DNA of 64,000 nucleotides from Iphione sp. A-MEVVRFRX5 (lineage: Eukaryota), in the NCBI GenBank assembly GCA_976226885.1, contig OZ320313.1, positions 113,088,001 to 113,152,000 of the forward strand, in the 5' to 3' direction. Positions 1,360-43,396 of this stretch are shown here, piece after piece. Numbering within the stretch: position 1 is the first letter of the stretch; every line of letters begins with the position of its first letter. The notes under the pieces are model-generated. The model saw only the letters and a program-made list of their open reading frames with translations. It was not told the origin of the DNA and did not search any database. Both the position numbers and the translations under genes were made by a program.

Positions 1360-1441
1360 AACGCCAGAATGCCCTACTGATCCAATCGAGCTGCAAAACG
1401 TTAACGCCAGAATACCCCACTGATCCAATCGAGCTGCAAAA
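1360..1441. repeat. 43-bp tandem duplication (2 copies)
   Basis: aacgccagaatgccctactgatccaatcgagctgcaaaa at 1360 and aacgccagaataccccactgatccaatcgagctgcaaaa at 1403. Confidence 0.85.
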
Positions 1442-1568
1442 GGTAATGTCCTTGTCTTCTGTCAATCGGTGGAGGAGGAACTGAAGACACTCAACTGCAC
1501 ATGAACAGCACATCCCAATAACCCACTTGAAGCTGTCAGAGATGGACAATCTGAAGGGTGAGACCTAC

Positions 1569-1911
1569 CTGGACGGCACTGTTGAGGAAGCAGTTGTTGT
1601 CGCCTGGCGCGTTCATGAGGCCTTTGGTACTGGTGAGGGACATGGAGAGGCGTGGGTTCCATGCCTCCCGCCAGTTGGCCATCCTGTCAAGGTGCGAGAG
1701 TCGGGAAGCCATCATCTCACAGAGTTCTCCCTCGCGGGGCTCCTCCCCTGCTGATGGTCCTTGCTGTTGCTGCTGCTGCTGTTCTGAGGCGGGATGCTGC
1801 GGGACACTCTGGCTGGACAGTTCTCCACCATTAACTTTGGCATGGTTAAGATAATTGTTGTTGCTCTGTTCTTGTAGGACGTTCACCTCACCACCGTCAC
1901 TACTACCACCC
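1569..1911 (-). CDS. USP53/USP54: Coding exon of a USP53/USP54-family deubiquitinase containing the start of the USP domain (Cys box); later exons lie off the left edge
   Basis: Translates ...[38 protein letters not shown], matching the USP53/54 signature [24 protein letters not shown]. Acceptor tttgcag|G at 1911; phase-0 donor CAG|GTAGGT at 1569/1568. Frame is open across the whole exon and includes Q7 (1761-1781). Confidence 0.87.
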
Positions 1912-4041: not shown

Positions 4042-4238
4042 CCATAGGTACCGGTCTTACTAGAGTTATTTCGGACGCTTTTCACTATACAAGTCTGCTG
4101 TAATGGGCCTATATTGTCAAGTCCAGGGTGCATTGTCGGGCGTTCTCCCGTCATCCATGACGCAGAGGCGGGGAGATGTCTCTTGACGTGACACAACCGA
4201 CGGAAGGAGTGATGACGTGAGGAGGACGCCGTCACCAT
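4042..4238 (-). CDS. Candidate upstream first coding exon of the USP53/54-like gene
   Basis: ORF MVTASS...SKTGTY ends in GG|GTAGGT, a phase-2 donor that joins in frame to the 1911 exon (which needs 2 nt). Lies in a CpG-rich block. No recognisable homology. Confidence 0.3.
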
Positions 4239-6649: not shown

Positions 6650-8300
6650 GTCCCAAGCAGAAGTATGGCGCGGAGACGAACATACATTTTGTTGTGCCAG
6701 ACAATCAGGTCAGAGCGCTGGTCCGTGACACTGCGCCCGTCCGCTTTTAGCGCAGCCCCTCTACCCGGACTCGCAAGTAGGTGGGTAGGTCGTGGAAAGG
6801 TGTACCTTAAGCTTACCTGCGGTGCGGGCACCTGTATGAACGGGATCGCCTTAACACAACCAGCTAGCTCTATACACCGACTTAACCCAGGTAGTGACAC
6901 AGGTGCAGACCTCGCTGTCCAAATACCGCCTCATTTAGAACATACATCGTAAGGGGAAAGGTGCGAATATGTCCTGTTCACCAAGTGGTATAATAAAAAT
7001 ACTGACTACGATTACCTTGCTGTAAAAGTTTACAACGCTGCCCACGCACTCTGTTCGGTCACACCTCCCGACAACTAAAGCCAGCACAGGCCTTCCCCCC
7101 GCTACAAAGCCTCCGCGATCTGTACAGCCGTGGTCGACTCACCTGTGAGTGTGTCCGTTCCTATGGTCTAACTTCATCATTGATCATCACTCGCTGACGT
7201 TAAAACGAAGGGGTAAAGATCCAAAACGTCTCTCAGTTTCGATCACATTCTCTCCTATTCCTCGCGGCAGCCATTTGGTGGCGGCGGTGTTTGGGTCTGG
7301 GTGCGTAGCTTTGCGCCTCGCTTCGCGTGCTGTGTATGCTTCAGTCTGAGTTGGCAAGCCCGCCCAGACGCAGCCAGCCAATCAGAGTCCAGCCAGGCGG
7401 TCAGGCGTAGCTGGCCTAGTGGACGGAGTAGTAAGTCGGCTCCATGGCCGGCACGCACCTACTACGGGTTCGACTAAGCACCATCCTGTCGGTCAGGAGT
7501 GAAGTGCGTCATGACAGGCCGATAAGAGCCGCTTCGTCTGAATGCACTTTGATCCCGCTCACCACTAGATAATCCACGTAAACAGACGACAATGGAATGT
7601 GGGACTCCCGACTCCAAGCGCTGCCTCCTTTGATCTGTGCTTAGCGCTTCTTATTTGCTGTCCCTCGCAGTAACCCCCTTCTCCGCACGCAGAGCGGTGG
7701 TCAGTGTACAGTGATACACGTAGAACGGCAGAAACTGCATACAAGCACGATATCGAAGTCCATGCTTTCGACGTTCAAACACTCACATGAAATAATAACA
7801 GTGGGTGGAGCTGCATTATTTTTTTTATCAGTGGTTCAGAATGTACCCATAAAACATGTGGATCCAGCAGTACTCGACTTTAGTTGATACCACGACGAGC
7901 ATTAAGCAGTAGTACATCGAGAGCGTCGAAAACTGGGACGTAGCCATTGGTTAGTAACCTGAGACTGATTACGGGACTGCAAGGCCCACTCGACGCACGG
8001 GGTTACCCCACCACGAACGGGTGGGTGGGTGTGGGGAGCAGTAGAGGGCGCCCCACTCGGAAGGGGTCACCTGGTAGATACGTCTAGAGGAGAGTCCTCG
8101 GTGCAGCCGACTCCACTGGTTACATTCTAGCGATGCCGGGTAGCGATGAAGTAGTGGACCGACTGGTCGCTGTACTCACTCACTTTTAATAGTCGTCGAC
8201 TCACTCACCTTAGTATTAGTCGTCACCAGTCACGTCCGTCGCCAGTGAAGGTGGCGAGTGAATGGTTATAAGCCTATTCAAGCCGGTTGTTAGCAAAACG
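6650..8300 (-). promoter_or_regulatory. CpG-rich promoter/5'UTR region with several candidate non-coding first exons for the USP53/54-like gene
   Basis: Consensus - strand donors CAG|GTAAGC (exon end 6817), CAG|GTGAGT (7143) and AAG|GTGAGT (8209); CCAAT box near 7378; locally high CpG. Confidence 0.35.
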
Positions 8301-9364
8301 CCCTCCCTAGGGGTTTAAATTTTGACATGACATCGACATATTTTTTCAGCAGACAATCCTGAGCGCAAAGAATGTCGAAAATTGAAGATGAACTGCATCA
8401 TGTGTGTCATTTGCTTTGAAATGGAATAGAAATACCTGTATCATCATTTTTTTTTCATATTTATCAAGAGAAAATGTACTATTCGTGGCTACTTAATCTT
8501 GCGCCACTAAATATTTTTTTACTTTTATCAGAATAAGGAATGAATAACTAAATAACTGAGACGTGCCTTAGGCCACTCTTCGTCTTGGCCTGCGGACAGC
8601 CTTCTGGCACTCTCCGTCATTATCAAGATGTCTCACTTGAGGAAATCGGAAGAGAAGCTGTGAAATGACACATGTTTCTACAACTCAGTTAGTACGAGAA
8701 CAACAGAGAATAGCCCCGGACTGACCACATACACTTCGGGGTGAGCGGCAGGTTTGAACTGTCTATACTCTGACGTGACACAGTGGGCATGCGGCCAGTA
8801 GTGCGGTCCTCCTTCGACCCTTACCAGCCGTAAACAATTCATGACCACAGACAGCAATCATATCACTGTGAGATGCCTGGAATGGCTACCAAATGAGTTG
8901 GCCAAATACTGTGAGGAGCACCCGCACAAGTTACCTCATGTACCTCATAACACCAGAAGTTGACACCTCGTCTGCTACACAGCGGACATGAACTCGATAA
9001 TAAATTATTCACATGGAAATTTCTGAAATGGTGTATGTGTATGTTAAAAGTTAGATCACGATAACTGGAATTCATTCCTGAAAGCGGCAGTGCGTGCAAA
9101 TATTCGGACCAAATAATTTTTACATGCTATCAAGGCACTGGCATGTTAAACGTGCACGGTCAGAGCACGAGTCTTCACTTTTAGAAACAAATGTAAAAAA
9201 CATTTAATTAAAAAATGAACTAGTACACGCAGTAGACTTCAGAATAGAAGCACCATTCATCATACACAGCCTTGCACTTTTTATTCCTCTTATTAAAGAC
9301 GAATTTGGCTATATTCCGATGACTGCCATAATACAAAGACAGGGCTAGAACATTTGACCAGTAT

Positions 9365-9430
9365 TTTCATGATCTTCATAATACTTGTATGTACTTGTTT
9401 CATGATCTTCATAATACTTGTATGTACTTG
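9365..9430. repeat. 33-bp perfect tandem duplication
   Basis: tttcatgatcttcataatacttgtatgtacttg x2. Confidence 0.9.
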
Positions 9431-11173
9431 TTACGTTGAATTCCCTTTAATAACTTCCGCAAAGCAATATTCATGTTACCTATACTGTACGTGGGGTATA
9501 GTAAACATGGCGCACAGGACCTGTTATGTACCACAGTAATTTCATTTCATTTCATTGTATCTTTTACCAGGAATATATTCACCTATCATATGACAGGGAT
9601 CTTCCATATCCTCCTGGGGTAGCATACTACCATCTATTGTTGAGAATTGAGAGACCAGAATACCCGGGGTTGTCCCCTACTCTTATTTCTAATAGGTTTC
9701 TGGGGTCTTTTTGTGCATAGGGGACAGAATCCTATACACCCACGGCCTTTTTACGAGTTGTGGACCACTCTGGGTTGGGGCTACAGTAAATCTGTCTGGT
9801 CATTGTCTTAAAATTACAACATTTCCTTGGACTGCTAAAGAAATGCACGTTCTGTTTCAGCAATAATTTAACATTTACATGTAATTTGTTGAGGGGAGGG
9901 GATATCACTGTATGGTAATACTGGCCATCCTGTGATTGTGACGTCTATGTCATCGCTTGGGACCCAACGCTTGACAAACAGGAGAAGGTCAAAGCTTCAT
10001 AGGGTGCCGTGTCCTGGGAGGGACTCCAGACCCTGGATGGCGTTTGCCCTCTTTCCGTCCCAGAGACCCTCGAAGCGCCCCCTATCCCCAGCTTCCAAAG
10101 CAATACATCGAGGATATGGCATTCACTTGCATCCTAGCTACAGGAGAAGAATTCGTGCACAGAAACCCCGTCGACGTGAAGACCCCAACACACACACGAC
10201 ATGTCACCACTACGATGTGGACCCGCATACGTGTATAGAAAAAACTGAGGGAAAAGATAGACACACCCCATTTCGAAAGGGGTGGTGGTAGGGAAGGTTA
10301 AGCTCTGACAATTTCACTTTCGCTTTTGTTGCATTTGTCGGAAAACAGATTAAAGACCCAACACTCAAAAATCATTATGTTAGGGTAGATTTGTCAAATT
10401 TTCTGCATAACATTAAGAAAAAAACTTTGAACAGTGCAATGTCATGAGGAATGCACTTAATTGGGACATGGTCAAGACATCAGTATTGAAATGTTGACAT
10501 TCAGAGCAGGGCTAATTCCTTTTTAATTAAACTGTATGTTTATCTTGTGTACATTTGCCTTCCACCGCACTACGCAACTGCCATTATACCGCCCAACGTA
10601 TGCTGTAGTATATATGACGTCACCATGACATTACTACTCCACTAATGACGCCACTATAACGTCCCTTACGTGGTAGGTGTTGACAGCGTTCGCGGAGATT
10701 ACAACAGATGGATGCTGACAGTCAACACCTGGAGATGATGAACCACAGCTTGGACATGGTAAAAGTGATGCATCGAAAAGGTAATTGAGCTGATATTCGG
10801 ACCAAGCGTGCGACCTAACACCGTATCCATCCTCCATTGGAACCGATCTCTTCCTCTAGATCGCAACAAAGATATAACTAAATTCGCCAAAAGGAACATA
10901 AATCTGTCACAACAAATAAATAAATTGCAACAGGTTTCTCTGTACACAGTGCCACGGTTGACATCCACAGAACCTGTTACTCAAAGCGACGGACCACAGT
11001 TCACATAAAAGATTATGTCAGTTAGTCGATTTAAGGAGAAGAGATGTTTTTGGAGACATTATTAAGCAACTGTATTCACCCCTGTCCCATTGGCATCTCC
11101 TCGACATCATCCCATGCACATGTACCAAACTCGGCAAAGTCTTTGAAAGGCGCAGGAGACACCACTAGTAAGT

Positions 11174-11186
11174 TGCCATCTAGTGG
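11174..11186 (-). promoter_or_regulatory. CTCF-like motif
   Basis: Reverse complement CCACTAGATGGCA fits the CTCF core CCASYAGRKGGCR. Motif match only. Confidence 0.35.
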
Positions 11187-14100
11187 ACAAAAGACGCGCT
11201 AAGAACTTAACCGTTCCGCAAACGTGCTGGCAACCTATGGGAACATTCACTGGCGCCACCTACACATAAGATGGGCCACAGACAGACAATTACTATAGCC
11301 CCTGGCCAGCCATTCAGATCTGCTCCAAGGGTGACTTCCATCAGGTACACAGGAGCCCAAGCCATTCACACACTAGGTGCGATGGTCCTTTCATCTGTCC
11401 AAGCTTGCCGTCGCTGCATCCCCAATGTGCCTCTCCTTTCCTCTGCACAGGTCTGCAGTAATCGCGCTGTATGAGGAGTTGCGGGGAATGAACGGCGTAC
11501 GCATACTTTCAATTCGACACATTTTGTGACTAATTTGACACGAAGAAGCGTCAAACTTTGAGGAAAGCGCTGTATGGTTCCGGACAGGATTCACACTAAC
11601 TCCGCTTATCAATGGTACCAAAATGCACAATTCAGTTGGAATAAGGGAATGGCTGAGAACAGGGTAAATACGATAAAACAGACAATACGCATAATTGTGC
11701 ATTGGACAAACCTAATCCCTCTAATGCTTGCCTTGCCTTTGTCTAGACGAATTTTTTAAATTCGTATCTAACATTCTGCTTTTTTTTGGGGGGGGGGGGT
11801 CAAGTCTATTTACAGAATGTAATATTAAACAAAGGCCTGGACGGCATACGTCGATAGTGACGTAACACAGCACCTGACTGCTGTGTCTAGTGGCAAAGAC
11901 CACTGGCAACTAATACCTGTAACGTGGGAATACAGGGGGCGGGGTTCATTGTGTAAACCATCCTCCTTCCACCCAAAACCCTTCCTCCTAACAAAAACTG
12001 GCGTTTAAGAGCCTACATGCACCTGTGCGTGTTGGCTTTGAAGTATTTGTTTCATAGCACTCTGAGTCAGGGCCTATTGTCAAACTCCCTTTAGCCCCAC
12101 TTATGTGATCTTGAACAGCTCCATATGGATTGATGCAATATTTGATAATAAATTTGACTAACAATGAACATATACAAACCAGCTGATATGATCGACATTG
12201 CCGCAAATATATCTGTATGTACACATCTGAGCCAAAGTTATTAAAACTTAAATGCTCTTGTACGAGGACTGGTGTCAAAGCTGCTTAAGAGTTAAAGCTT
12301 GGCGTTAGCATCGACGATTCAATACACGTCTCTGACCTATTGTCTTGTGTTACATGAAGTTTGGTGGCTGGTTGTTGGCAACGTGTTGGCTGAGATTGAG
12401 GGCTGCTGGAGTGGGTATAATTAAGCCTCAAAGGGAACATTTGCAGGGATGCGTACGGTTTAAAAGGGGGTAACCTATCTGTTAAGTAGGTAGTGCACGG
12501 GCGGTACCTTCCGAAATGCTGGGCAAATGATGAGATGGAAAGGACTGAAGCATAGGTAGTAACGAATTTTCTGACTGGATTGGCAGGGGTGTCCTGTACC
12601 CCGTTGATTACGTTCAGTAGATTTTGTCACAGCAAGTATTGATGCATGTTAAAAATGACAGTGACTACTGTACTTCGTGTTTTCGTCAAATGTTTTTTCT
12701 GACACGTTTCTCCTGAGAATGATGATGGGGGCGGGGGATTATAGTTGTAGACATTTAAAAAGTGATGTCATGAGTGGAAGACAGTGCTATGTGGAATCTT
12801 AATCTTCAGGTATGCAATCAATGTACATTTACTGACATCGATAAAATCAGAACTTTGGCAGGGGACTAGCTTCAAACCAAGCTGATAGGGAAACAACTCT
12901 TGCTCTGTTATTTAACTATCATCCTTGATTATCACAAAAAAAAATCAAATTTAATGTGTTACATGTGGAAGTAGTGCCTAGAGTAAAATAATATTCTGAC
13001 GAAGGCAGCTTTGAGTATTCGTGCTTATCGCATTGATCGCTGATATCGACCACCTGATGAAGCTTGGAGCACCACTCTTCATGCCCTCTTCCCTCTCTCT
13101 CTATCTGATAAGGCCTAGGCGGGATTACAGAGTGGGTTCGAAATCCTATATACTCTTGCCCTCCTTTCGCAGGACAGGGGTCCAGGACAAACATATTTTA
13201 TGAACTGGGGCTGGGGTGTGTCTCGACGAGGCGTCCAGGAATAAATCACACCCACGGCAGCATTATCAGTGGTTGCCATCGATGGGAACTGGCTATAGTT
13301 TCTTTATCTGTGGGCCTGATCAGTGCCAATTGCCGACAGGTATGCAGTGGCGACTCAGCCCCGTAAAGTGACCTTCCTGCAGGTGACCAGGGTTTGAATG
13401 ATAAACAGCATGGGAGCACCCTTCCCTTTAAGGTCCCTGTCCCAGGGGTTCCCGTTTCATGTTGACCGATGGCACTTACACAGTCTTCAGAAGGCTTCAA
13501 TAGCCTCAGTATACAGTAGGGCACAATGTAATGTAGGATAAAAGACTATAAGTTACTACAGTCGCGACTTACATATGGCAAACTCACTGGAGATTTTTGT
13601 CTCTGGGTCTCGTAGTCATTCCCAATCATGCGGTCACACAATACATTAATTTTCCAACAAATACCATCTGTGTAGAGCAGTATGTTGCACAAGTCACAAC
13701 CAACTCTTCAGATCAGATTTTGTAGTTTCTAAATTGTATTTTACGTGTAATTGCACAGCAACTTACTTATAATATCAAAATAAACCTTTCAAGTGTATAA
13801 CCGCGAACAATCAGTCCTAGCAGTGCTCCACTCAGCCTTATCATGGTGATGCATACAATAGATGAACATGTACAATTTTCGAAGAAATCATCCATTCGTG
13901 AGGCATAATCTGCCACGTCCTATCGTAGTAGTCTCTGGCACATACATACACAGACCTGAGCCTACGCAAAATACACTCTATGCGTGGACATTATTATCTG
14001 CTGACACAGTGGCACAGGCATGAAAACACTTTGATCCATGCTTCTATTTCGCACAAGAAATGCTCAAGCCATCTGTTGGTATTGTTCAGCTGTTTGATGC

Positions 14101-16903
14101 ACCGTAAACACAACAATGCAATCTGCCGCGTCCCACTGTAAGCGGCCATTGTTTGAGGCATGTCATGGGATACCTCTGGCTGAAAAGATTCCATGTCTTT
14201 TTTAAATTTTAACATATTCCATTGTTAGCATTAATGATAGGAAAATTGGATATTCGTGACAGGAACACACATGGACAAGATGAGGAACGAAAACCTTACT
14301 ATCGTTGGCACTTACGGGACGAAGAACGCGTCAAGTAATTATCTTTTAAGTGACATACTCTTTCTATAGAGAAGGAGACGAAACAAATGCGAGAGCTGCC
14401 ATCCTTTGTCTCTGAATAGACACATTATCGACAACGACTGAAGATACAACAGGAGTTCACAAACCGTGAAGCTATAATCATATGATCGCATGAAATCACT
14501 GATAATGTGTCTAATCGGTTTGCTTCTGTCCTATAAATATCCCTCTGGCGATTATGGTCAAACAAAATTAACCCTGTACAAAATGTCACCTGCTTTGGTA
14601 CATGTGTCAATGATACAAATACATGAACTTATTTGCGCATGGAAAGCGAAAGTGCAAGAAAACACTTTTACATTCTGGAAAGTCCCTGATAGGACAGCAA
14701 TTTCGATTTAGAATACAAAACGCACATTGGGAGTGGAGGCTTTTCTTTTATCTTCAGAGCAACGAGTACCAAATAGGAGGAACAATTCCAGTTAGACAGT
14801 CTTCGCATATACGTATATTTCACAGTCTCGTCTTACATATGTAGCCGCAACATGTATGGATGTACCATGTTTAGACATAACATTTAGACACATAAATGTG
14901 ATGTTGATCGGTTGTTTACCAGTTTTCCGACACACAGATGTGCATCTCGACAGGTGATAAGTTAATTTCAACACAAGCATTTACCAATTTCTGCCCCCGA
15001 GGTCACTTTGTCCCTTGTTGATACATGTACATAGAAAAGCCAACATGCACTCTGGTGTGGGAGCATCCATACTAATGCACCTCTGTGAAAAAGATCGGAT
15101 ACATGGAAAGATGAACTTAGTCTGATGCTTCTGACACCCGTCGCAGGAAGGGTTTTTATGCTCTACATTTCGAAGCAGAGTTTCATTCCCAAAACTGCAT
15201 GCTCGCTATTTTTGCAACTATTCTGCTGAGTATTGGAGATCAGGACATCCTTTTATATCTGCTGACAGTAGTTCACTATGCGTCATTCAACTGTTGCCAG
15301 CTTTCTGAATATCATATATATCAGCAGGAAGTATGCAGTTTAAGGTCGGTTTGTTTCAGGTCATGGCCGTTCCTACTTAAATGTGGCGATGGAGAACAAT
15401 TTGAAGGCTTCCCAGAATCACAAAGGAAAAACAGAAGGTCAAAGTGCCAACTGTATGGAAATGCCATCCCATTCCGACGTATTAGGCCACATGAAATTGC
15501 TAACATTAAAACTCATCGAGAACGTTAAATGTGATGGGTTTAATATAGGAAGTAAATATAAATGTCCAGAAGTTCCTGTCATATGCCATCATTTAAAAAA
15601 AGGAAAAGTTCTTCACGAGCATCAGGATACTGTTATCATCAATGTTCCAATGTTATCGACAATATAATGACTGGAAAGTATACATTAAGATGACTGGGGG
15701 TGCAATTAAATTTTAAAAAATTAACAGGACTCGTACTCATTCCAAGGGTCAACAAGATTAAAATTTTAATCACAAGCAGCAAGCAATCGATCATCAAGGT
15801 AAAAATGATCGTTTCTCGGACAAACGGAAGGATTTCTAAGTTATCTTTCATTTTGAAATCATCTCCTCCTTAGTACTTTATATCCCGTTCTATATTCTCA
15901 AAACCAATCATTGTAGTCTTTGTAATATGCAGAATGTACAGTGCAAACAAACTGTGTTGTGTTGCTTGTGACATAAAATGTGAAAACGGCGATGTGTGAT
16001 GTACAGACATGTAACCGAAGCCTTTGTACAAAGGCAAAGGGTCAACAGAGGTAAATAGTAGTGAGCTATCAGAAGCCATCAGACACACGTAGAACATACA
16101 TACTACCCTGGAGTTCAGTGCTACTATACATAAATGCCAGTAACGCATCCTCCCGAATTGGCATGTTCAGCTAACAATCACTCATCATGACAGGTCTGTC
16201 TGAAAAGACACGTCTAGGTACGAGGTCGTGCACGCCAAACCTCGTGTCATTTTGTAGATTGGTATCTCTCTTTGGAAATAGGTAACATCCGGTGCAGACT
16301 TATGAAAAAATAACAAATTACTCAATCGAAATTCGCCAAACCTGTTACACGGTTGTTATGGCATAGATACGAGCGATCAGGACAGGATTCCGTTTTCAGA
16401 CTCGTGTTGCATGTACATATCACTGCTTGCCTAGGTGAGTTTTTGCACATTTCATCCGGCTAGATTTGTGGACTGTCTACGCCACGGATTATTCATAATG
16501 CATTCAGTGCCTGTATCCGGGGTCCCTGAGTCATGCACACGCAGTCATCAGGCGATGTATTTTGCCCCAGACTTGGACAAACTTCTCCAGACTGAGTCAG
16601 GACCGGTTATTTTAATCGAAGACTGGCATTAGATCGCCACGACCACAGGAGCTGTGTTTACATGATACACCCATGTAATCTCAGGTCCAAGCCCTACAAG
16701 TAATTACTGTGTAATTGTGTACACTGTTTAAAAATAACCCCATGATCAAACGGACAGCCGAACAGGGTTGAAAGGTACATAAATGAGCACGTATTTGAAT
16801 GCTGCTGATAGAAACACTGGGACATAGCGACAAGGCGGCGACTTCACACCGAAGTTTTCACTGATTCACTTGATTTAACAAATCGACATATCATGGTGAT
16901 AGA

Positions 16904-20051: not shown

Positions 20052-20195
20052 NNNNNNNNNNNNNNNNNNNNNNNNNNNNNNNNNNNNNNNNNNNNNNNNN
20101 NNNNNNNNNNNNNNNNNNNNNNNNNNNNNNNNNNNNNNNNNNNNNNNNNNNNNNNNNNNNNNNNNNNNNNNNNNNNNNNNNNNNNNNNNNNNNNN
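20052..20195. other. Assembly gap (N run)
   Basis: Ns in the sequence. Confidence 1.
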
Positions 20196-23111: not shown

Positions 23112-23151
23112 ATGTCAAAGTGCCACAAATGTGGAAAACCCGTGTATTTTG
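23112..23151 (+). CDS. RASSF2/4/6-like: LIM-RASSF gene, exon 1 (MSKCHKCGKPVYF)
   Basis: CRIP-type LIM start (cf. CRIP1 MPKCPKCNKEVYFAE); phase-1 donor G|GTAGGT. Confidence 0.9.
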
Positions 23152-26084: not shown

Positions 26085-26143
26085 TAGTCTTCGGTGATAT
26101 TTCTTAATCATTGCTGATGATTCCACTCACTGGAGAAAGACTA
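26085..26143 (+). ncRNA. Putative type III hammerhead ribozyme with a non-canonical core, in RASSF intron 1
   Basis: Stem III tagtct/agacta; NUH = CUU; stem I cggtgat/atcattg; CUGAUGA core; extra U; stem II tcca/tgga; GAAA. Folded by hand; activity untested. Confidence 0.45.
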
Positions 26144-26607
26144 GCATTAAGTATTCCCGATGTAACTGGTTGGTCGGTGTAGTTACAACACCCTTGGGAA
26201 ACACTGCTAACTGTTATTCGTTCCACACAGTATCGGGGTGCATTTGTATACATTGAGGATATCCACAGTCAATCCTCCCTAATCCTCCCGTGTCTCCCAT
26301 ATCCCATATATTTTATCATGTTGATTAATCAACCTTTAGTAACAGTACATGCCAGCCGGAGGAGTTGAAAGTAGGTATTGTGTGAGATTACATGTATGAT
26401 CTTTTCAAGTTGCAGAATCGGCCTCTGTAAATCACATGATATGCTGAGTAGAGGAAAGTTAGACTTAGCTAGACTTAAGGGAGATATCCTTTTGTAGTCT
26501 CTTAATAATGGTATGTAAATGCACATATTTAGACAGGTTAAGATACACAATTGAATCACTTTGTGTATGGCGCTTTTCAATCAAAACTTTTTCATTTTGA
26601 ACACCAG

Positions 26608-26702
26608 CCGAGCGTCGTACGTCTCTAGGTAAGGAATGGCATCGACAGTGTTTACAATGTGAGGAGTGTGGAAAAGTCCTGCATCCGGGTCAACATGCAG
26701 AG
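26608..26702 (+). CDS. RASSF2/4/6-like: LIM-RASSF exon 2 ([32 protein letters not shown])
   Basis: Acceptor ccag|, donor GAG|GTTAGT; LIM HxxCxxCxxC; phases 1 to 0 are consistent with neighbours. Confidence 0.92.
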
Positions 26703-32505: not shown

Positions 32506-32648
32506 CACAAGGGAGTACCCTATTGTAACGTGCCCTGTTACGGCGTGCTGTTCGGGCCCACCATGTACGGCCATGGCTCACCGGTCGAAGCCCACCGCAG
32601 TTTCGGTCGCCCTTCTCTTCGTAGCCCGAAGGAGTCGCCAGTCAAAAA
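32506..32648 (+). CDS. RASSF2/4/6-like: LIM-RASSF exon 3 (HKGVPYCNVPCYGVLFGPTMYGHGSPVEAHRSFG...SPVK)
   Basis: Acceptor ttgcag|, phase-2 donor AA|GTTAGT; completes the CRIP-type LIM (CNxPCY) and its Gly-rich FGP tail. Confidence 0.9.
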
Positions 32649-33780: not shown

Positions 33781-33948
33781 NNNNNNNNNNNNNNNNNNNN
33801 NNNNNNNNNNNNNNNNNNNNNNNNNNNNNNNNNNNNNNNNNNNNNNNNNNNNNNNNNNNNNNNNNNNNNNNNNNNNNNNNNNNNNNNNNNNNNNNNNNNN
33901 NNNNNNNNNNNNNNNNNNNNNNNNNNNNNNNNNNNNNNNNNNNNNNNN
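33781..33948. other. Assembly gap (N run)
   Basis: Ns in the sequence. Confidence 1.
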
Positions 33949-36063: not shown

Positions 36064-37197
36064 TATGAGCCTGTAAAAAAAAGTGTGGTGAGTCAGCCAG
36101 CTTATGTACATCGTCAGTATCAGTCACTTACGTGATTCACTTTCACTTACTGCAAGTAACGGGTTCTATTTGTTTTTTTTTCTTAACCCATGGAAACGGC
36201 CCCTCCGATAACAGCACATTCCAAGCTGCCTATCAGATAGCCACAGCTGTTGCAGTCTCAACTGCGCCCTGGAAACAGACCTGCTTTTTTGGCTAGTCAA
36301 ATACCTAAGGAAACAGGCTATAGTGATCATCATTCAGTGCACTGGTCGACCCTGCAGACCCAGCGCGGAACACTTTGGTTTTATCTGTGCACGTTATTTA
36401 TGCAATGACAATCCTTATGTTACTATTATTGATCCATCTATGGACTATTCAATATAATATTATTGTTTGTGGCCATCCAGTTTAAGCAACGCTCCGTTTA
36501 TATTTATATATCCTGTACCTGTGGTACGCCCAGATAACGGGAAAAGTTAGTCCTGCGATTAGCCGCCAGATGGGCTGGCGAGCTGCTCCTGTCACAGATA
36601 GCGTAGGCATCCACGTGGCCTAGATTGATGCACTGAGCGTATGGGCTTCCTCCTCCTTCCCATGAGTTGCTCTATGTGTGATGTGGCTGAAGTAAACGTG
36701 CAGACGCCTTCACTTTCACTATGAAATTTGTTTTTTTAGCATCACTTATATGCCAGCAGCAGATAATGATATTGAGCTGTATTCCGGACTACATTACTAC
36801 CTGCAGGCCGAGTATAACTCAGCCCATATTTGAGCTTGTCCCGTTTGTGAAATTAGTCCTGGCGAGGTGAACAGGACGCTATGTCAAAGGAGTTTATAAA
36901 GACATTCAGAGGAGCTCGACTGCCGCACATTTGAGTTATATTTTCTGTGTTAAGGTGTGGATGTACTTTCCATTTTGACCAGGGCAGGGAGTCTTGTTTC
37001 AGTGAACTACTTCGAAGAAAGAAGACGTAGCAGGTGGAATGTTTCAAAGTTACTGCAGTGTTTGAGTCTCATTCACCAGAGATATCTGGTTGCGGGACCT
37101 TAGGTGAATGTTTGCCTTTAGCTTGCGTCATTAATGTACTTGGAGGCACGCGACTGCTCGGCTACAAGTCTTCTCCTGATAGACTTGGCGAGTTCGA

Positions 37198-37210
37198 CGC
37201 CAGGTGGCGC
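37198..37210 (+). promoter_or_regulatory. CTCF-like motif upstream of the internal RASSF first exon
   Basis: CGCCAGGTGGCGC fits the CTCF core. Motif match only. Confidence 0.3.
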
Positions 37211-38058
37211 AGCGGAGGCGGTCCGTCTGAGCGGCGGTCGATACGACCGTGTAGCCCAGGGCTGCACGCTGGCGAGTCTACTACCATCAGTGCTCACTGC
37301 CTCGGGCGGGAAGGTGGCCCTCTGGTCATACTCACCAGCCCTCGCCAGAGTACTGCTGGAGTCCGGAGACCTGGAGATCTTCACCAGGACATCGTGTGAA
37401 GCGCGTCCTAATATCGACAAGTTGGTTCTGCGTGGATTTAGTTCTTTATATACATGTTATATATACATGTATATCCCGGACTAGGCGTTCGCCCATCACC
37501 ACCATAAATCCGTGTGTACATTGTGAGAAGTTTCCTGGTGTGCTGCGCACATCTCTCTCCCCACGGAGGCGTGCCAGGGGATCACGTCCAGTTCAGGGTG
37601 GAAGGTGTAAACTTGGACCCACTGACGGCAGACGGTACACCTATGCCCTTTCAGGCCGTCCAGGAGTAGGCACGTAGCAGCTAAAATATCGGCAGTTCAG
37701 GCTGAGACAGATAACTGCGTCACTGCTTTCATCTGCATACATACATAGGGAGACCGAGTCGGCTCTGCTTTTTTAAACGACCCACCGGTGGAGGTTTTTA
37801 GCGAGCTGACTTTAAAAGCTGCTCCGTGTAGCAGCGACCCACGCGAGGAGAGACGACCCTCACCAGGTCGAGATTAACTCTTTCACGATTGGCGATGCGT
37901 AGTTCCCATGGATAAACTGGATACATTCCCCGTGGAGTGATCTGCCTTTTGTCACGGATAAGATAAATAACCTGACTGACTGAGAGCGTGCATTGTACAC
38001 AGGTACTCCGGGAGTGGTCGTTGCGGTGACCTCAGGTGTAAGGATTTACGGCAGCAAG

Positions 38059-38117
38059 ATGACGTACCCGCACGAGAAGTTGACCATTCTGGTGGCGAGG
38101 GACAGATATATTTGGCT
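38059..38117 (+). CDS. RASSF2/4/6-like: Alternative internal first coding exon of RASSF (MTYPHEKLTILVARDRYIW-L), giving a LIM-less 316-aa isoform
   Basis: aagATG start; phase-2 donor CT|GTATGT joins exon 4 in frame. Aligns without gaps to my recollection of human RASSF2 MDYSHQTSLVPCGQDKYISK. Confidence 0.7.
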
Positions 38118-38569
38118 GTATGTATTACATTTACAGGGCGATGTCATATTTACCAACTGGGGGATCTCTCCCGGGTGTTTGTTGAGTTTGCAGAATTCCA
38201 GGTGTTTTTATTAAGTCGCTTGTATGTGAGACGGCAAAGAGTAATACGCATAGTTGTCTGGCTATGATTGAAATATGTCTCGAGTGATACATTATTGTTT
38301 CTTTATCCATCATTGTATACTGGAGTTGTTTTATATGCGTGAAAGATAATTTTCTTTATACCAGCTGCCCGACATTTACTCGCCTGGTTACCGCGCGATG
38401 CTTTTTTTTAAATATAAAAGTGTAGGATGACACCCAACAACAGAGTTTTCATTGGTAGGCGTCATTTTGTGACGCTTCAAGCTACATGTTCTTCATACAT
38501 ATCGTGCATATATGACAAGGTTTGACTTTCTGCAGAACCCGAATTCTAATTGTCTTATTTCTTCCCCAG

Positions 38570-38642
38570 ATCGGACCTGGAGACGAAACTGAAAGCGTAC
38601 AACGCGTACCACGAGGGCCGCTCACAAGTAACATCCCGAGAG
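38570..38642 (+). CDS. RASSF2/4/6-like: RASSF exon 4 (SDLETKLKAYNAYHEGRSQVTSRE)
   Basis: cttccccag| acceptor, GAG|GTACGT donor; cf. RASSF2/4 ELLxxLKTYNxYxEG...HRE. Confidence 0.92.
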
Positions 38643-40146
38643 GTACGTCACACTGCGATCGTCCTTCTGACCATACGTATATACTCGTTCTGTTCACGTA
38701 CTACATGTGTGGTGGACATGTAGTGTTAGTCGAACGGCTTGCCATGATGTTGACATTACGGCGTTCTATCTAGGTCCTCTCGTCTGATTAGTCTTCCTCG
38801 TCCGAAGCAGCGATGGCAATTGTCAACAATGCCAGTGCGCTTTATCACCAGTCTATCAGCTGGGTGAAACTAGTTGTATGTATTGTTTCTGAAAGTGACC
38901 GATCTATGTTCCGATAGTATTGCACAATGTACATAAGAACGGCTAACACCGGTGTCTTCCTCAGTCTGGTATCCTCTGTGACTTAGACTGATAATCAGCT
39001 TCTCGACTTACTTTTTTTAATGTGGTTTGCCTATCATATGGTCACAGTCCAATATGATCACGTATGTGCACAGCAAATTGTTGGCCAGTCCTTTTTCACT
39101 GTACATTCAAGATATAATATCATGTGATTAACCGCACCCCACCCCCGTCTAGACAATGACTCAACTTTTAGAAATACCTAAAATTGTTCACGGCAATTTG
39201 AGGTGACAGTAAGTGTGTGTTCCTCCCATTGTTGTAGTTTTTAGGCAGGTTAGGCTTCGTTAAGTGGTTAATCTGTTCTAATCCTGCAGTTACCTAGTAA
39301 ATCATCATAATCACCGTGCGTATATTTGTGACCGGGGATTTTTTTGTCAATCTCACGAATCTTCATGGAAAGACCAACGCAGATAAAAGAAACGAGCTGA
39401 TAACTTGGCTTTATGCACAGGTACAGAACTATTATGATAGCCGCACCCTTTTTACTTTGTCAGTAGCAGAACCTCTTTACTCAAGGTGGGCAAGACGACA
39501 CAGTACTACTTCTAAATAAAAAAAAAACCTGTTTCTCCATATCATTATCAATACCAGGTCATGGGTAAAAAGATAGAGACGTGGTATGTCACACAGCAAC
39601 ATAGTGATCAGTTCAGTCTGTGCACCATGCAGAACCACGTCGCTTTGCTGAGAGAGCAGTTTAAAACTTAAACGTGACATATTTCGTTCCACGAGTTTCG
39701 CAGAAAGTTCCTTTTGCAGAAGTAGCTGAGGTTCATCACAGATGGTTCTTGGCAGCTTATGCAGATATACCATCGGAAAATTTTACATACAAACCCTGGA
39801 TGATGTGGATGAACCCTGTCATAGTACTGCTCAGATTGACCATAGAGTACAACTGTCCTATTTGAAGTGAATGGTTGCACTACATGAGGAAGTTGCCCTA
39901 CGGTAGAAAACGCGATTAAATAAACGTAACGACCAGCCTTTGTTATATCAATAGTGACAAATCTTGGCGATATCTGGGTACGTGTAACAGTGGCACTTGT
40001 TTGACGTCTCAAATATTTACCACATTTTACACTCGGAGTGTACAAAGAAGTGACCGAAGAGAAATTTCAAGTGGATTTTCATGTATGAACTTGCCAGTGT
40101 ACACATACCATTACCAACTCTTTACTTATCGATTGGAACCATCCAG

Positions 40147-40302
40147 GTGAACGGGCGTATGGTGTTTGAGGGCGTGCTGCGCGTACACTGGGGTGTTGTG
40201 TGCCCTATCCAGCTTCAACCGAAAGATGACTCCTTACCCAAGTCGTGGCGCCGCAGTTACCACATGGCCATCAACAACGGCCTAGAAGAGGAACTCGCTC
40301 AA
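40147..40302 (+). CDS. RASSF2/4/6-like: RASSF exon 5 (VNGRMVFEGVLRVHWGVVCPIQLQPKDD...LAQ)
   Basis: cf. [23 protein letters not shown]; phase 0 to 0; CAA|GTAATG donor. Confidence 0.9.
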
Positions 40303-40982
40303 GTAATGCACCGGCACATTCCTCCGTAGCCAAAACTGAAGAGGTTTTCATGCAAATTATGAAGATTAAAAAGCTGTCGATATTTGGAATACGGTTATAG
40401 TCCTTCACAGTTTATAGCAGGCTAACTTTATAAGAATGACCATGAATAAAGCGCAAACAATCAGCGATAACTGCTCTGTAAGCACTATGAGGTTTGAAGA
40501 ATTATTGAAGTGTATATCTCTTTTGCATGAGTATTGCTAGTAGAATAAGGCATGATGTCTCTATGGTGGAAAGATAAGGGTAAAAAGACGTGTCTTTTTG
40601 GTATCTATGTACATGTAGTTAAATTCATTTAATACATGTCACTGTGTCTCCTACATGTATTACTCTTTATCGTTTGCTTTATTTAGTCTCCTCTGCATCT
40701 CCTAGTTGTTCTCTAGTTCTTTATCTGGCATGCTTCTTTCTAGTGGGCCAATACTACTTGTGCCAGCTTGTACAAGGTAAGGGCAACAGTGGTCTAGTCC
40801 TCTCTAAATTCGTACACATAATGCTGTGACTATATGAAGTTCATAATGGCAAAGTGCTCACGCTCCGGATATCTATATGCGAACTAACTGACTTGCTTAT
40901 AACATATACAAAGCATGCTTATAATTCTAAAATAAATCCATTTAGAAAGACACACAATAGTTCATCACCACAATTCTTACAG

Positions 40983-41204
40983 GATGCTGCCAGGAATGGT
41001 GATATAGCAAGCAAGAACCGGAAGTCAAGCCTCGATGACCTTTTCCAAGCCGCCGTCCGTGACCCTGAACCCTCGCCACCAACATCTCCGGTCAAGGGTG
41101 AGAAGCGGGAACAGCCAAAAAATGTGGTCATGCGGCGAGATCGAGGACGAAGGAGGCAGAGCAAACGTCTCTCCATCTTCAGTGGTCATGAGTACAATCT
41201 GGAG
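40983..41204 (+). CDS. RASSF2/4/6-like: RASSF exon 6 (linker and start of RA domain, ...RRRQSKRLSIFSGHEYNLE)
   Basis: cttacag| acceptor, GAG|GTAGGC donor; cf. RRHRFSINGHFYNHK. Confidence 0.9.
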
Positions 41205-41561
41205 GTAGGCAAGCGCTTCGATACCCACAGCTACCTGAACTGCAACAAGTTCTTGTCATCCATTTTGCTGTACGAAGCTACTCTTTTGAGGAATTGTGTA
41301 TTTATAAGCATAAAAAGGCTTATTGTGTTATGAAACTAAAGTAAATTTGCACTTAACGTTTGAGAAACCATGGTATTGGCTAACATATATTTACATCAAG
41401 GAAAAGTAGTACAAATAAAGGCTGTGTTTATTGTCATAAATTCTGTATTGTGCTCACAAGGTTCATTAAAGTAAAGAAATCCTCGCGCAGCTTTTCTCGG
41501 CTCATCTTTTTTTTGGTCGCGCTGAGTTTTCTGTCAAAATATTGTCTTCTTTTGTTTTTAG

Positions 41562-41663
41562 ACCAGTGTGTTCACACCCACTCATGGAATGGTCACAAAT
41601 GTACACGTCACCAGTCTAGACGCTACGCAAGAAGTCATCAACATGCTTTTAGATAAATTTAAG
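41562..41663 (+). CDS. RASSF2/4/6-like: RASSF exon 7 ([34 protein letters not shown])
   Basis: Close match to RASSF2 [34 protein letters not shown]; canonical splice sites. Confidence 0.95.
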
Positions 41664-41898
41664 GTGAGACATTGGCTCCTGTGCTTCAAAAGGGTGGGGT
41701 GGGGGACTTAGGAATGTCTGTTGTCAGACCCTCCTTCACAATCTTTTGTTTCTTTAAACCTCAAAACCATCTGTTTGATTTAAATAATGTTTACATATAT
41801 TTGCCTATATGGGCGCCTGCTGTTGATTTGTTCCTTGATCGTTTCCATTGAATACAAAAAATAATTGTCTCAAAACCTTGTCGTGAAAAACACACGCA

Positions 41899-41978
41899 GA
41901 GAGAGAGAGAGACAGACAGAGAGAGACAGAGAGAGACAGAGACAGAGAGTGACTGACTGACTGACTGACTGACTGACA
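41899..41978. repeat. Compound (GA)/(GACA)/(GACT)n microsatellite
   Basis: Direct inspection. Confidence 0.93.
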
Positions 41979-42212
41979 GAACAAAGTGTGAGTACATTCA
42001 TAGAAAACGAAATGGCTAGCCAACCTTGTAAGAGTGTAGAGAGTTTCATGGATAACAGTATTGGTTGTTACTGCAATCCAGTTAAGAAATGCATGTATTC
42101 GACTTCATTTAGTGGTTTCAGCCCGGTCAGTTTTGTTTTGAGGTAAACTCAATGCCCTTCTGACGATCTCTAGATCAGTCAATGCTATATCTACGTGCTA
42201 TTTTACCGCCAG

Positions 42213-42386
42213 GTGGTCAACAACCCTGAGGATTTCTGTCTGAGCGTTGTGCGGATGAGTGGGGAGACCCGTGTACTGAAGGATGACAGTTACCCGCTAC
42301 TGGAGCGCGTCCTGCTTGGGCCCCTAGAGGATGAGGTCAAGATCTTCATCATGGAGAAACACCGTTCACAGGACGTGTCCACTGAG
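42213..42386 (+). CDS. RASSF2/4/6-like: RASSF exon 8 (RA domain end: VVNNPEDFCL...YPLLERVLLGP...KIFIMEK...STE)
   Basis: cf. RASSF2 YPLIARILQGP...KVFLMEK; canonical splice sites, phase 0 to 0. Confidence 0.95.
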
Positions 42387-42872
42387 GTAGGCCCCTTCCT
42401 CCTCGCATAGACCAGATAGATAATACTTGATCAGAGGCACTCCACCCACAACCATGAAGACGTGAATGGGGATATATAGAGAATATAGAACCACATACAT
42501 GTATTTATGTAGAGTAGACTTCCTCATAGAAGACCAGATTGCAGGGGAGACCAGATCGGGCGAGAGGCTACTATATCATAGGACAAAACAGTATATTTCC
42601 AATATGATGAGAGACTGCAGGGGAGACCAGATCACAGGAGAGAACATATTCCTCCAGTCCCTGAGGTGGTTGTCCAAGCAAGAGTTCACTGTACTCATTT
42701 TAGATCCCCCCGCTTCCAACAATCGTGGTGGTGGAGGGCAAAGGAATACTACCCTCCCAACTGCGTCAATATCCGTCATGAACTGGTGATCCTCATAACT
42801 ACAAACATTTTAGTGTCAGGTCAGCTATACCCTTCTCTTGGTATTAACGTCCTACGTGTTTGCTTCTTACAG

Positions 42873-42970
42873 GTCGCCCAGTTCATTAACTTACCAGAAC
42901 CTGTTTTGAAAGGGTTCCTAGTAAAACTTGATAAAGACGAACAGGAAGATCTTGAAGATCTTAAAATTAG
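42873..42970 (+). CDS. RASSF2/4/6-like: RASSF exon 9 (SARAH: VAQFINLPEPVLKGFLVKLDKDEQEDLEDLKIR)
   Basis: cf. [27 protein letters not shown]; phase-2 donor AG|GTAAGT. Confidence 0.93.
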
Positions 42971-43329
42971 GTAAGTCCTGTACATTATTGATAAAAGTTG
43001 AGTCTGCAGCCGCAGATAATTGTGGTCTGTTGAATAAGATAAGGAACAAGTGGGCACATTTTGTAATTTTGATTCGCCCACTGCACACATGGTGACAGCA
43101 CTGAGATATACCTACTACCACGTGACCAGCACACAATTTTACTTAACTATTTTTTGTGAAATGTCAATAGGTCAATAGGCATAACTGAGGTGTGAGTACG
43201 AAAACAAATACATGTAAACAAACTGTAAAATTCTACTTCAGCGAATGTTTCCTACTAACTTAAAGTTTTGTTTACCTACGAAATACTAACCAGTTTAGAA
43301 GTTAAGAGCGGGTTGCTGTTTAATTTTAG

Positions 43330-43396
43330 GTACAACCTGTTCCGTCAGCAGCTGCAGGAGCAGCTCCAGCAAATTCTGACCTCCAAAGACCGGTAA
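43330..43396 (+). CDS. RASSF2/4/6-like: RASSF terminal coding exon (YNLFRQQLQEQLQQILTSKDR*)
   Basis: ttttag|G completes Arg; end of the SARAH helix; TAA at 43394-43396. Confidence 0.88.

What the first reader, a model, noticed from the sequence alone, without database searches (positions are those of the whole stretch)
37900..38642. Hidden internal first exon gives a vertebrate-type LIM-less RASSF inside an invertebrate-type LIM-RASSF gene
Seen in sequence: intron 3 holds a 59-nt ATG exon with a GTATGT donor in the phase needed by exon 4. The product reads MTYPHEKLTILVARDRYIWLSDLETKLKAYNAYHEG. Established (from memory): human RASSF2 begins MDYSHQTSLVPCGQDKYISKNELLLHLKTYNLYYEG and has no LIM, while Drosophila RASSF has an N-terminal LIM. 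The two N-termini align without gaps (M1, Y3, H5, D15, Y17, I18, L23, L27, K28, Y30, N31, Y33, E35, G36). Inference: this locus makes both architectures (389 aa LIM-RA-SARAH and 316 aa RA-SARAH) from two promoters, and vertebrate RASSF2/4/6 descend from the internal promoter after loss of the LIM exons. That would be a switchable LIM input on a SARAH-domain Hippo/MST regulator.
Basis: partly seen in the sequence, partly recalled or inferred. Interest (0 to 1): 0.85.

Follow-up and report, generated by a model that had tools for sequence, protein, structure and literature searches.

The report
Candidate LIM-less start exon in RASSF gene
A worm-type (not amphioxus) Hippo-pathway RASSF gene with a zinc-finger LIM head has, inside an intron, a well-formed start exon resembling the first exon of vertebrate RASSF2 well beyond chance. 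It could make a LIM-less protein, but no RNA evidence or conservation in related animals could be found.

Summary
**Observation: confirmed.**
- A 59-nt ATG exon (38059-38117, donor GTATGT, phase 2) splices in frame to exon 4.
- The resulting isoforms are 389 aa (LIM-RA-SARAH) and 316 aa (LIM-less).

**For a real exon**
- Scored against 77 vertebrate RASSF2-type first exons, it ranks 1st of 1103 ATG..GT candidates in the window.
- Null P is 1.4e-4 per candidate, about 0.004 for intron 3.
- It also has a good donor, a purine at -3 and no upstream ATG for 150 nt. Only 0.4% of candidates pass all three (filters chosen post hoc).
- Chicken RASSF2 exon 1 also has 59 coding nt in phase 2. AlphaFold models it as a confident beta-hairpin, and the candidate exon's residue pattern fits it.

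**Against**
- No RNA run was listed.
- No similar exon turned up in nine other protostome loci.
- The conserved S-K before the junction is W-L here.

**Correction: the genome is very likely not amphioxus.**
- A published survey finds LIM-RASSF absent from deuterostomes.
- The RASSF2-like proteins retrieved from amphioxus, Ciona, sea urchin and acorn worm are all LIM-less.
- A tree places the window with annelid and nemertean genes.
- Earlier notes of this scan, on other pieces of this genome, also call it annelid-like.

**Verdict:** a plausible but unproven alternative first exon (about 0.45). Chance ORF is about 0.38.

The parts
23112..23151 (+). Exon 1: ATG and first zinc-binding CxxC of the LIM domain (MSKCHKCGKPVYF)
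   Evidence: Collinear with Capitella, Lingula and Tubulanus LIM-RASSF first exons.
26608..26702 (+). Exon 2: middle of a CRIP-type LIM domain
   Evidence: Pfam LIM 31.1 bits, E 2.8e-7. PDB 1IML cysteine-rich intestinal protein E 1.2e-10 and CRIP2 2CU8 E 7.8e-10.
32506..32648 (+). Exon 3: end of the LIM domain plus linker, donor GTTAGT, phase 2 (ends ...SPVK-K)
   Evidence: PDB 1IML E 4.4e-6. Capitella exon 3 ends with the same SPVKK and the same split codon.
37963..37969 (+). TATA-like ATAAATA about 90 nt upstream of the candidate ATG. Possible core promoter element; weak evidence only.
   Evidence: No ATG between 37909 and 38058. GC is 0.52-0.53 over 37001-38000, the highest in 20-46 kb.
38059..38117 (+). 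Candidate alternative first coding exon E1b (59 nt, MTYPHEKLTILVARDRYIW + 2 nt), donor GTATGT, phase 2
   Evidence: No RNA evidence.
38570..38642 (+). Exon 4: common acceptor exon (SDLETKLKAYNAYHEG...), start of the conserved N-terminal domain
   Evidence: The same phase-2 junction 10 codons before the YN motif occurs in chicken, stickleback, bird RASSF6, amphioxus, Capitella, Lingula, Tubulanus and Lottia.
40147..40302 (+). Exon 5: conserved EG.LR.HWG...I.L block of the N-terminal domain
40983..41204 (+). Exon 6: linker and basic stretch before the RA domain
41562..41663 (+). Exon 7: first part of the RA domain
   Evidence: Pfam RA 19.9 bits on this piece alone.
42213..42386 (+). Exon 8: second part of the RA domain
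   Evidence: Pfam RA 23.4 bits, cut-off 21. An orthologous exon with the same borders is in ENA contig L001, 81% aa identity.
42873..42970 (+). Exon 9: start of the SARAH helix
   Evidence: Pfam Nore1-SARAH 15.7 bits on this piece alone. Aligned to SARAH-bearing homologues.
43330..43396 (+). Exon 10: end of SARAH and the stop codon

Best explanation
The window holds a protostome (annelid-like) RASSF gene of the fly type: a CRIP-type LIM domain (three exons), a conserved N-terminal domain, then RA and SARAH. Its long third intron most likely holds a genuine alternative first coding exon (38059-38117) driven by an internal promoter. Transcripts starting there would skip the LIM exons, splice to the shared acceptor at 38570, and give a 316-aa LIM-less RA-SARAH protein. 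Its first 19 residues (TILVA / RD / RYIW) would rebuild the two-strand beta-hairpin that opens the N-terminal domain of deuterostome RASSF2/4/6. The SARAH helix would pair both forms with the Hippo/MST kinase; only the long form would carry whatever the LIM finger binds. Shown: the sequence anatomy, the shared ancient splice site, the above-chance similarity and the hairpin in the chicken model. Inferred: transcription, splicing, the fold of the worm peptide, and any effect on Hippo signalling. I put about 0.45 on the exon being real. Within that, about 0.3 of the total is on it being homologous to the deuterostome first exon.
For: - Gene model and both reading frames.
- The LIM isoform aligns end to end with Capitella LIM-RASSF at 49.5% identity, so the host gene is sound.
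- E1b ranks 1st of 1103 ATG..GT phase-2 candidates on both strands of the window, score 31 against a next best of 25.
- A third-order Markov null gives P(score >= 31) = 1.4e-4 per candidate, or 0.0035 for the 25 candidates in intron 3.
- E1b also has R at +3 and G at +5 of the donor, a purine at -3 of the ATG, and no ATG in the 150 nt upstream. Only 0.4% of background candidates pass all three.
- Chicken RASSF2 exon 1 has the same 59 coding nt and the same phase.
- The AlphaFold2 model of chicken RASSF2 puts residues 9-13 and 16-19 in a beta-hairpin (mean pLDDT 93 for residues 11-20; residues 1-10 average 65). The hairpin is part of a structured domain spanning residues 9-68.
- The sea-urchin first exon, a true orthologue, scores 28 on the same scale, so 31 is in the range expected of old homologues.
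- A LIM-less mRNA with a 394-nt stop-filled 5' UTR exists in a related protostome (Logan contig L008).
- RefSeq predicts LIM and LIM-less forms of the Lingula gene.
Against: - No RNA run was listed for the exon, so neither the start site nor the 38117-38570 junction has been seen.
- No similar exon was found at the matching place in any other locus examined. Capitella's intron is only 58 nt. Lingula and the amphioxus upstream region gave nothing. Two clitellate-like loci and several termite loci from metagenomes gave nothing. Tubulanus and Lottia with a 4.4-kb intron gave nothing.
- The LIM-less N-termini of the sister clade (P0002 group) are short and unrelated.
- The S-K that ends the exon in all vertebrate paralogues and T-K in urchin is W-L here.
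- The exon-quality filters were chosen after seeing the exon.
Confidence: 0.45

Rival explanations
1. Chance open frame. The 59 nt are ordinary intron sequence that happens to start with ATG, end at a usable GT in the right phase, and resemble RASSF2. The gene makes only the LIM-RA-SARAH protein, or makes LIM-less forms some other way, for example from a start upstream of exon 3 as in Lingula X2 and contig L009.
For: - No RNA evidence.
- Absent from nine other protostome loci.
- Only 6 identities lie in the exon itself.
- The conserved S-K is not matched.
- The locus-level P of 0.004-0.015 is not extreme for a scan of very many windows.
- Other routes to LIM-less products exist.
Against: - It is the best of 1103 candidates in 64 kb and sits in exactly the one intron where it could work.
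- Its exon-quality features are shared by 0.4% of candidates.
- It has the same coding length as tetrapod exon 1.
- Its hydrophobic pattern fits the hairpin.
Confidence: 0.38
2. Real alternative first exon, but lineage-specific. An internal promoter and start exon arose in this worm lineage, and the likeness to vertebrate RASSF2 is coincidence or convergence on a hairpin that docks on the shared N-terminal domain. This probability is part of the 0.45 given to the best explanation (a real first exon), not additional to it.
For: Other protostomes have LIM-less transcripts with short, unrelated first exons, which suggests such exons turn over. No homologue of E1b was found in other protostomes.
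Against: Convergence on D-[KR]-Y-I at the same register, with the same exon length, is unlikely. The urchin exon shows that real homologues can keep this level of similarity.
Confidence: 0.12
3. In-frame cassette exon. Using the AG at 38053-38054, a 63-nt exon (38055-38117) would sit between exon 3 and exon 4 in frame. That would add the hairpin to the LIM form rather than replace the LIM.
For: Exon 3 and E1b both end in phase 2, and an acceptor at 38055 keeps the frame (read). No in-frame stop lies between 37993 and the ATG.
Against: The would-be acceptor has almost no pyrimidine tract (gtgtaaggatttacggcag). No LIM-RASSF protein retrieved carries such an insert between the linker and the LK.YN helix.
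Confidence: 0.04
4. One reading: an amphioxus locus that preserves the direct pre-vertebrate state, with vertebrate RASSF2/4/6 descending from this internal promoter.
For: Only the similarity itself.
Against: - LIM-RA proteins are reported absent from Deuterostomia.
- The B. belcheri gene is LIM-less, differs at 43% of exon-8 positions, and its first exon scores 5.
- The tree places the window with Capitella, clitellate-like, Owenia and Tubulanus genes.
Confidence: 0.02

Closest known systems
Drosophila RASSF (CG4656) and other protostome LIM-RASSF proteins (Capitella, Owenia, Tubulanus, Lingula, insects)
   Same: N-terminal LIM, then RA, then SARAH (PMC1828611). The 389-aa isoform aligns over its full length with Capitella (49.5%), Owenia (46%), Tubulanus (45%) and Lingula (44%), and its first 145-170 aa are 57-63% identical to insect proteins. 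Exon borders match those of Capitella, Lingula and Tubulanus.
   Different: None of those loci shows an E1b-like start exon, and their third introns are 58 nt to 4.4 kb. The fly protein itself was not retrieved here.
Vertebrate RASSF2 (and RASSF4, RASSF6)
   Same: No LIM. The first coding exon is 53-59 nt in RASSF2 (71 nt in bird RASSF6) and ends in phase 2 ten codons before the YN motif. The motif [DNE]-[KR]-[YFL]-[IV] sits at -6 to -3 from the junction. The 316-aa isoform aligns from residue 1 at 34-36% identity.
   Different: Vertebrates end the exon in S-K, whereas E1b ends in W-L. In vertebrates this is the only start described here, not an alternative to LIM exons.
RASSF1A/RASSF1C and NORE1A/NORE1B (RASSF5) promoter pairs
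   Same: Two promoters give forms with or without an N-terminal zinc finger on the same RA-SARAH core. RASSF1A and RASSF1C are stated to arise by alternative promoter selection (PMC2965177 abstract). The NORE1 pair is from my own knowledge.
   Different: The finger there is a C1 domain, not LIM, and the genes belong to the other branch of classical RASSFs.
Lingula anatina RefSeq isoforms X1 (396 aa, LIM) and X2 (312 aa)
   Same: One protostome gene is predicted to give both LIM and LIM-less products.
   Different: X2 has no coding exon of its own. It starts at a Met in the linker at the end of exon 3.
CRIP1/CRIP2 (PDB 1IML, 2CU8)
   Same: Exons 1-3 amount to a whole CRIP-type LIM protein. PMC11671023 places LIM-RA proteins in the CRIP tree.
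   Different: Here the LIM is fused to RA-SARAH. In Lottia the LIM exons are annotated as a separate 67-aa gene.

Membership tests
Classical (C-terminal) RASSF | Ras-association (RA) domain | tested here: met
   Pfam RA scores 23.4 bits on exon 8 (cut-off 21) and 19.9 bits on exon 7 alone. Aligned throughout with RA-bearing homologues.
Classical (C-terminal) RASSF | C-terminal SARAH coiled coil | tested here: inconclusive
Exons 9-10 align to the SARAH of Capitella and chicken proteins that pass the cut-off.
LIM-RASSF (fly type) | N-terminal LIM domain on the same polypeptide as RA-SARAH | tested here: met
   Pfam LIM scores 31.1 bits, with CRIP hits in the PDB. The exon 3 to exon 4 junction keeps the frame and reproduces the Capitella SPVKK junction. 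The splice itself has not been seen in RNA.
RASSF2/4/6-type N-terminus | Phase-2 intron ten codons before the LK.YN helix | tested here: met
   Window; chicken, stickleback and bird RASSF6. The LIM exon 3 uses this same site, so the feature does not by itself prove E1b.
RASSF2/4/6-type N-terminus | First coding exon with hydrophobic strand, turn, and [DNE]-[KR]-[YFL]-[IV] strand | tested here: met
   E1b has TILVA-RD-RYIW against chicken LVPCG-KD-KFIS. Score 31, P 1.4e-4 per candidate.
RASSF2/4/6-type N-terminus | [ST]-[KR] as the last two residues before and across the junction | tested here: not met
   Vertebrates have S-K or S-R and urchin has T-K; E1b has W-L.
Alternative first exon / internal promoter | Transcription start upstream of the exon and use of its donor | not testable with these tools
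   The look-up of sequencing runs listed no run, so read laying could not be used.
Alternative first exon / internal promoter | Conservation of the exon in related species | tested here: not met
   No candidate scores above 15 at the matching place in the Capitella, Lingula, Tubulanus, Lottia, clitellate-like or termite loci.

The most novel reading that the evidence does not exclude
The short first exon that opens all deuterostome RASSF2/4/6 proteins already existed in the bilaterian ancestor as an internal alternative start inside a LIM-RASSF gene. This worm still keeps both starts. Deuterostomes then became LIM-less simply by losing the upstream LIM exons and promoter. That would also give a natural with-LIM and without-LIM pair in one animal. 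Such a pair could test whether the LIM finger explains why fly RASSF inhibits Hippo while mammalian RASSF1A and RASSF2 activate MST1/2.
Probability: 0.28. Interest if true: 0.65.

Novelty: new variant of a known kind. Interest (0 to 1): 0.45.

Why it matters
Fly RASSF (with LIM) restrains Hippo by competing with Salvador and recruiting the STRIPAK phosphatase, whereas mammalian RASSF1A and RASSF2 (no LIM) activate MST1/2. This difference is discussed as an unexplained evolutionary divergence (PMC4929427). A published survey notes that LIM-RA proteins occur across animals but not in deuterostomes (PMC11671023); it does not say how the LIM was lost.

If this exon is real and homologous, it gives a simple route: promoter loss, with no need for exon invention. 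It also gives one organism in which both architectures could be compared. If it is a chance frame, the locus is an ordinary LIM-RASSF gene. Either way, the shared phase-2 splice site, the urchin-vertebrate homology of the first exon and the hairpin model are useful for annotating this family.

Tried and rejected
- **RNA evidence.** The look-up of sequencing runs on 37960-38117 listed no run, so read laying was unusable.
- **The species' own protein or a close relative.** Neither the exhaustive representative search with exon 8 nor the three word-based searches returned it. The closest was a 63-aa exon-8 fragment from an ENA metagenome contig whose introns are unalignable. The first word-based search was swamped by vertebrate RASSF2.
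- **JGI metagenomes.** A scan with the spliced 59-aa N-terminus found nothing. A scan with an exon-5 alignment gave 17 host contigs (termite-like and clitellate-like), none with an E1b-like exon.
- **A strict position-specific matrix.** Built from vertebrates alone it was too narrow: all scores were negative, with E1b top in intron 3 but 5 of 1312 window candidates at or above it. I replaced it with junction-anchored BLOSUM62 scoring and a matched null.
- **P0007 as a LIM-less isoform.** Rejected: its contig carries LIM exon 3 in frame upstream. P0011 likewise looks like a truncated LIM form.
- **Repeat, RNA gene or nested gene at 36.5-38.6 kb.** No self-matches, no Rfam hit, and no Pfam or Atlas match for the GC-rich ORFs.
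- **Folding or Pfam-scanning the spliced 316-aa isoform.** Not done, because it has no reference and long sequences must not be typed.

Full report
**1. What is in the sequence**

The plus strand between 23.1 and 43.4 kb carries one gene of ten constitutive exons.
- Exons 1-3 (23112-23151, 26608-26702, 32506-32648) encode a complete CRIP-type LIM domain. Pfam LIM scores 31.1 bits. The best solved relatives are cysteine-rich intestinal protein 1IML (E 1.2e-10 and 4.4e-6) and CRIP2 2CU8.
- Exons 4-10 (38570-43396) encode a conserved N-terminal block, an RA domain and a SARAH helix.
- The spliced product is 389 aa. It aligns end to end with LIM-RASSF proteins of Capitella (49.5%), Owenia, Tubulanus and Lingula.
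- Capitella ends its third exon with the same SPVK-K and the same split codon. The LIM-to-exon-4 splice is therefore the canonical form of this gene.

**2. The reported exon**

All of the following is read directly from the sequence.
- ATG at 38059, 19 codons plus two bases to 38117, then the donor GTATGT.
- Exon 4 needs exactly that phase.
- The product is 316 aa and begins MTYPHEKLTILVARDRYIWL-SDLETKLKAYNAYHEG.

Only six of them (M1, Y3, H5, D15, Y17, I18) lie in the new exon. The other eight are in exon 4, which both isoforms share.

**3. Is it more than chance?**

I listed every ATG-to-GT frame of 12-30 codons that ends in the phase exon 4 needs. Each was scored without gaps, anchored at the splice junction, against 77 distinct vertebrate RASSF2-type first exons.
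- E1b ranks first of 1103 candidates on both strands of the 64-kb window, with score 31. The next scores are 25 and 22.
- In 60 synthetic windows from a third-order Markov model, 9 of 64,404 candidates reach 31, which is 1.4e-4 per candidate.
- With 25 candidates in intron 3, the locus-level probability is about 0.0035. With the 105 candidates in all introns upstream of exon 4, it is 0.015.

Three ordinary marks of a first coding exon also hold for E1b:
- a purine at +3 and G at +5 of the donor;
- a purine at -3 of the ATG;
- no other ATG in the 150 nt upstream.

Only 0.4% of the background candidates pass all three. I chose these filters after seeing the exon, so they count for less than their product suggests. 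The 1 kb upstream is the most GC-rich stretch of the gene and holds one TATA-like motif. I treat both as weak evidence.

**4. Intron position**

- Chicken RASSF2 exon 1 has 59 coding bases and ends in phase 2 inside codon 20, the same length and phase as E1b.
- Stickleback RASSF2 has 53 coding bases in phase 2.
- Bird RASSF6 is also phase 2 at the same place.
- The same junction, ten codons before the YN motif, is used by LIM exon 3 in Capitella, Lingula and Tubulanus; Lottia's exon 4 starts at the same place. The LIM-less first exon of Branchiostoma belcheri uses it too.

The acceptor of exon 4 is therefore ancient. Whatever sits upstream, LIM exons or a short start exon, plugs into it.

**5. 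What the vertebrate exon encodes**

An AlphaFold2 model of chicken RASSF2 was built on a 38-sequence alignment (mean pLDDT 74.8).
- It places residues 9-13 and 16-19 in a beta-hairpin. Mean pLDDT is 93 over residues 11-20 and 65 over residues 1-10.
- The hairpin is followed by a helix (20-33) and three strands (42-68), together forming a compact N-terminal domain.
- E1b has the same pattern at the same register: TILVA, turn RD, RYIW, against chicken LVPCG, KD, KFIS.
- This is a plausibility argument only. The worm isoform itself could not be folded, because it has no reference.

**6. Whose genome is this?**

The evidence says otherwise.
- A published CRIP phylogeny states that the LIM-plus-RA protein is found throughout animals but is absent in Deuterostomia (PMC11671023).
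- The RASSF2-like proteins retrieved from B. belcheri, Ciona, Lytechinus and Ptychodera are all LIM-less.
- The B. belcheri gene has another gene, and no LIM exon, in the 10 kb upstream.
- It is only 57% identical to the window in exon 8.
- In a maximum-likelihood tree, the window falls in a clade with Capitella and clitellate-like sequences (SH-aLRT 91). That clade joins Owenia and Tubulanus (81), apart from amphioxus and from the vertebrate RASSF2/4/6 clade.
- Earlier notes of this scan on other pieces of the same genome also call it annelid-like. I used them as a lead, not as evidence.

I could not name the species.

**7. Conservation**

Here the case is weakest. At the matching place I found no frame scoring above 15 in any locus examined:
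- Capitella, whose intron is only 58 nt;
- Lingula;
- Tubulanus;
- Lottia, with a 4.4-kb intron;
- two clitellate-like loci and several termite loci from metagenomes.

LIM-less transcripts do exist in a related protostome clade. Contig L008 has a 394-nt 5' UTR full of stops and no LIM. Their first exons, however, are short and unrelated to E1b. One apparent LIM-less protein (P0007) proved to be an ORF-calling artefact of a LIM transcript. Lingula isoform X2 starts at a linker Met rather than in an exon of its own.

Absence by similarity is still not absence. On the same scale, the true first exons of amphioxus, Ciona and Ptychodera score 5, 12 and -2 against vertebrates. The sea-urchin exon scores 28 and vertebrate RASSF4/6 exons score 24-43, apart from one RASSF6 entry (Apteryx) whose annotated N-terminus scores 1. 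So some old homologues keep about the level of similarity E1b shows, and others lose it entirely.

**8. Weighing**

For a real exon:
- a similarity that is the best in 64 kb and sits in the only intron where it could function;
- correct phase and length;
- sound start and donor contexts;
- a fit to a structured element.

Against:
- no RNA;
- no conservation in nine loci;
- a mismatch at the two most conserved residues (S-K);

My estimates:

| Reading | Probability |
|---|---|
| Genuine alternative first exon | 0.45 |
| - of which homologous to the deuterostome first exon | about 0.3 |
| - of which lineage-specific | about 0.12 |
| Chance frame | 0.38 |
| In-frame 63-nt cassette using the weak acceptor at 38055 | 0.04 |
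| Amphioxus scenario as written | 0.02 |
| Other readings not considered here | about 0.1 |

**9. How it would work, and what it resembles**

An internal promoter would give an RA-SARAH protein without the LIM finger. Both forms could pair with the Hippo/MST kinase through SARAH. Only the long form would bring LIM-mediated contacts.

Toggling an N-terminal zinc finger by promoter choice is already known in this family. RASSF1A and RASSF1C are one such pair (PMC2965177), and NORE1A and NORE1B are another (my own knowledge). Mechanistically, then, this is a new variant of a known kind.

The novelty would be evolutionary. It would be a protostome gene keeping both the LIM start and the deuterostome-type start. 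That would explain the LIM-less state of deuterostome RASSF2/4/6 by simple loss of the upstream exons. It would also bear on the fly-versus-mammal difference in RASSF action on Hippo (PMC4929427).

**10. Limits**
- Assembly gaps at 20052-20195 and 33781-33948 were left untouched.
- The spliced isoforms were analysed only in scripts and were never typed in full into a tool. One 59-aa N-terminal peptide was typed for a single search.

Noticed in passing
window 26085-26190: Another first-stage note proposes a hammerhead-like fold here, in intron 1. The Rfam gathering-threshold scan of 20000-46000 gave no match to any family, hammerheads included. No permissive scan was run.
   Followed up: partly
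L028 (Lottia gigantea KB202619.1) 1-16507: The LIM exons are annotated as a separate 67-aa LIM gene, and the RASSF model starts at an internal Met of exon 4. LIM exon 3 (about 5429) and exon 4 (about 9994) lie on one strand, 4.4 kb apart. This is probably one LIM-RASSF gene split by annotation.
   Followed up: partly
L009 (JGI metatranscriptome contig Ga0307400_10255253) 1-198: The called 302-aa 'LIM-less' protein P0007 has LIM exon 3 in frame directly upstream, preceded by stop-filled sequence. The transcript either starts in intron 2 or retains it. Lingula isoform X2 may be a similar case.
   Followed up: partly
P0088 (Lytechinus pictus RASSF4-like) residues 1-19: The sea-urchin first coding exon scores 28 against vertebrate RASSF2 first exons (null P about 3e-4). 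The amphioxus, Ciona and acorn-worm exons do not. The deuterostome start exon therefore dates back at least to the urchin-vertebrate ancestor.
   Followed up: partly
window 36900-37700: This is the most GC-rich block of the gene region (0.52-0.53), with open frames of 93-121 aa in several frames and on both strands. It is single copy in the window, with no Pfam, Rfam or Atlas match. It could be a promoter-like island or just stop-poor GC-rich DNA.
   Followed up: partly
window 50479-52869: An uninterrupted 796-aa open frame on the plus strand, serine-, proline- and glutamate-rich, with a basic C-terminus and no Pfam match. It is a probable large coding exon of a neighbouring gene.
   Followed up: no
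L001 (ENA metagenome contig REYS20-1 scaffold_437934): This contig holds the orthologous exon 8 with identical splice borders and about 80% exon identity, but its introns are unalignable. It is host DNA of a related animal inside a metagenome, and the closest relative found.
   Followed up: partly
window 20052-20195 and 33781-33948: Runs of N (144 and 168 bases) in the region upstream of exon 1 and in intron 3. They were left as they are.
   Followed up: no
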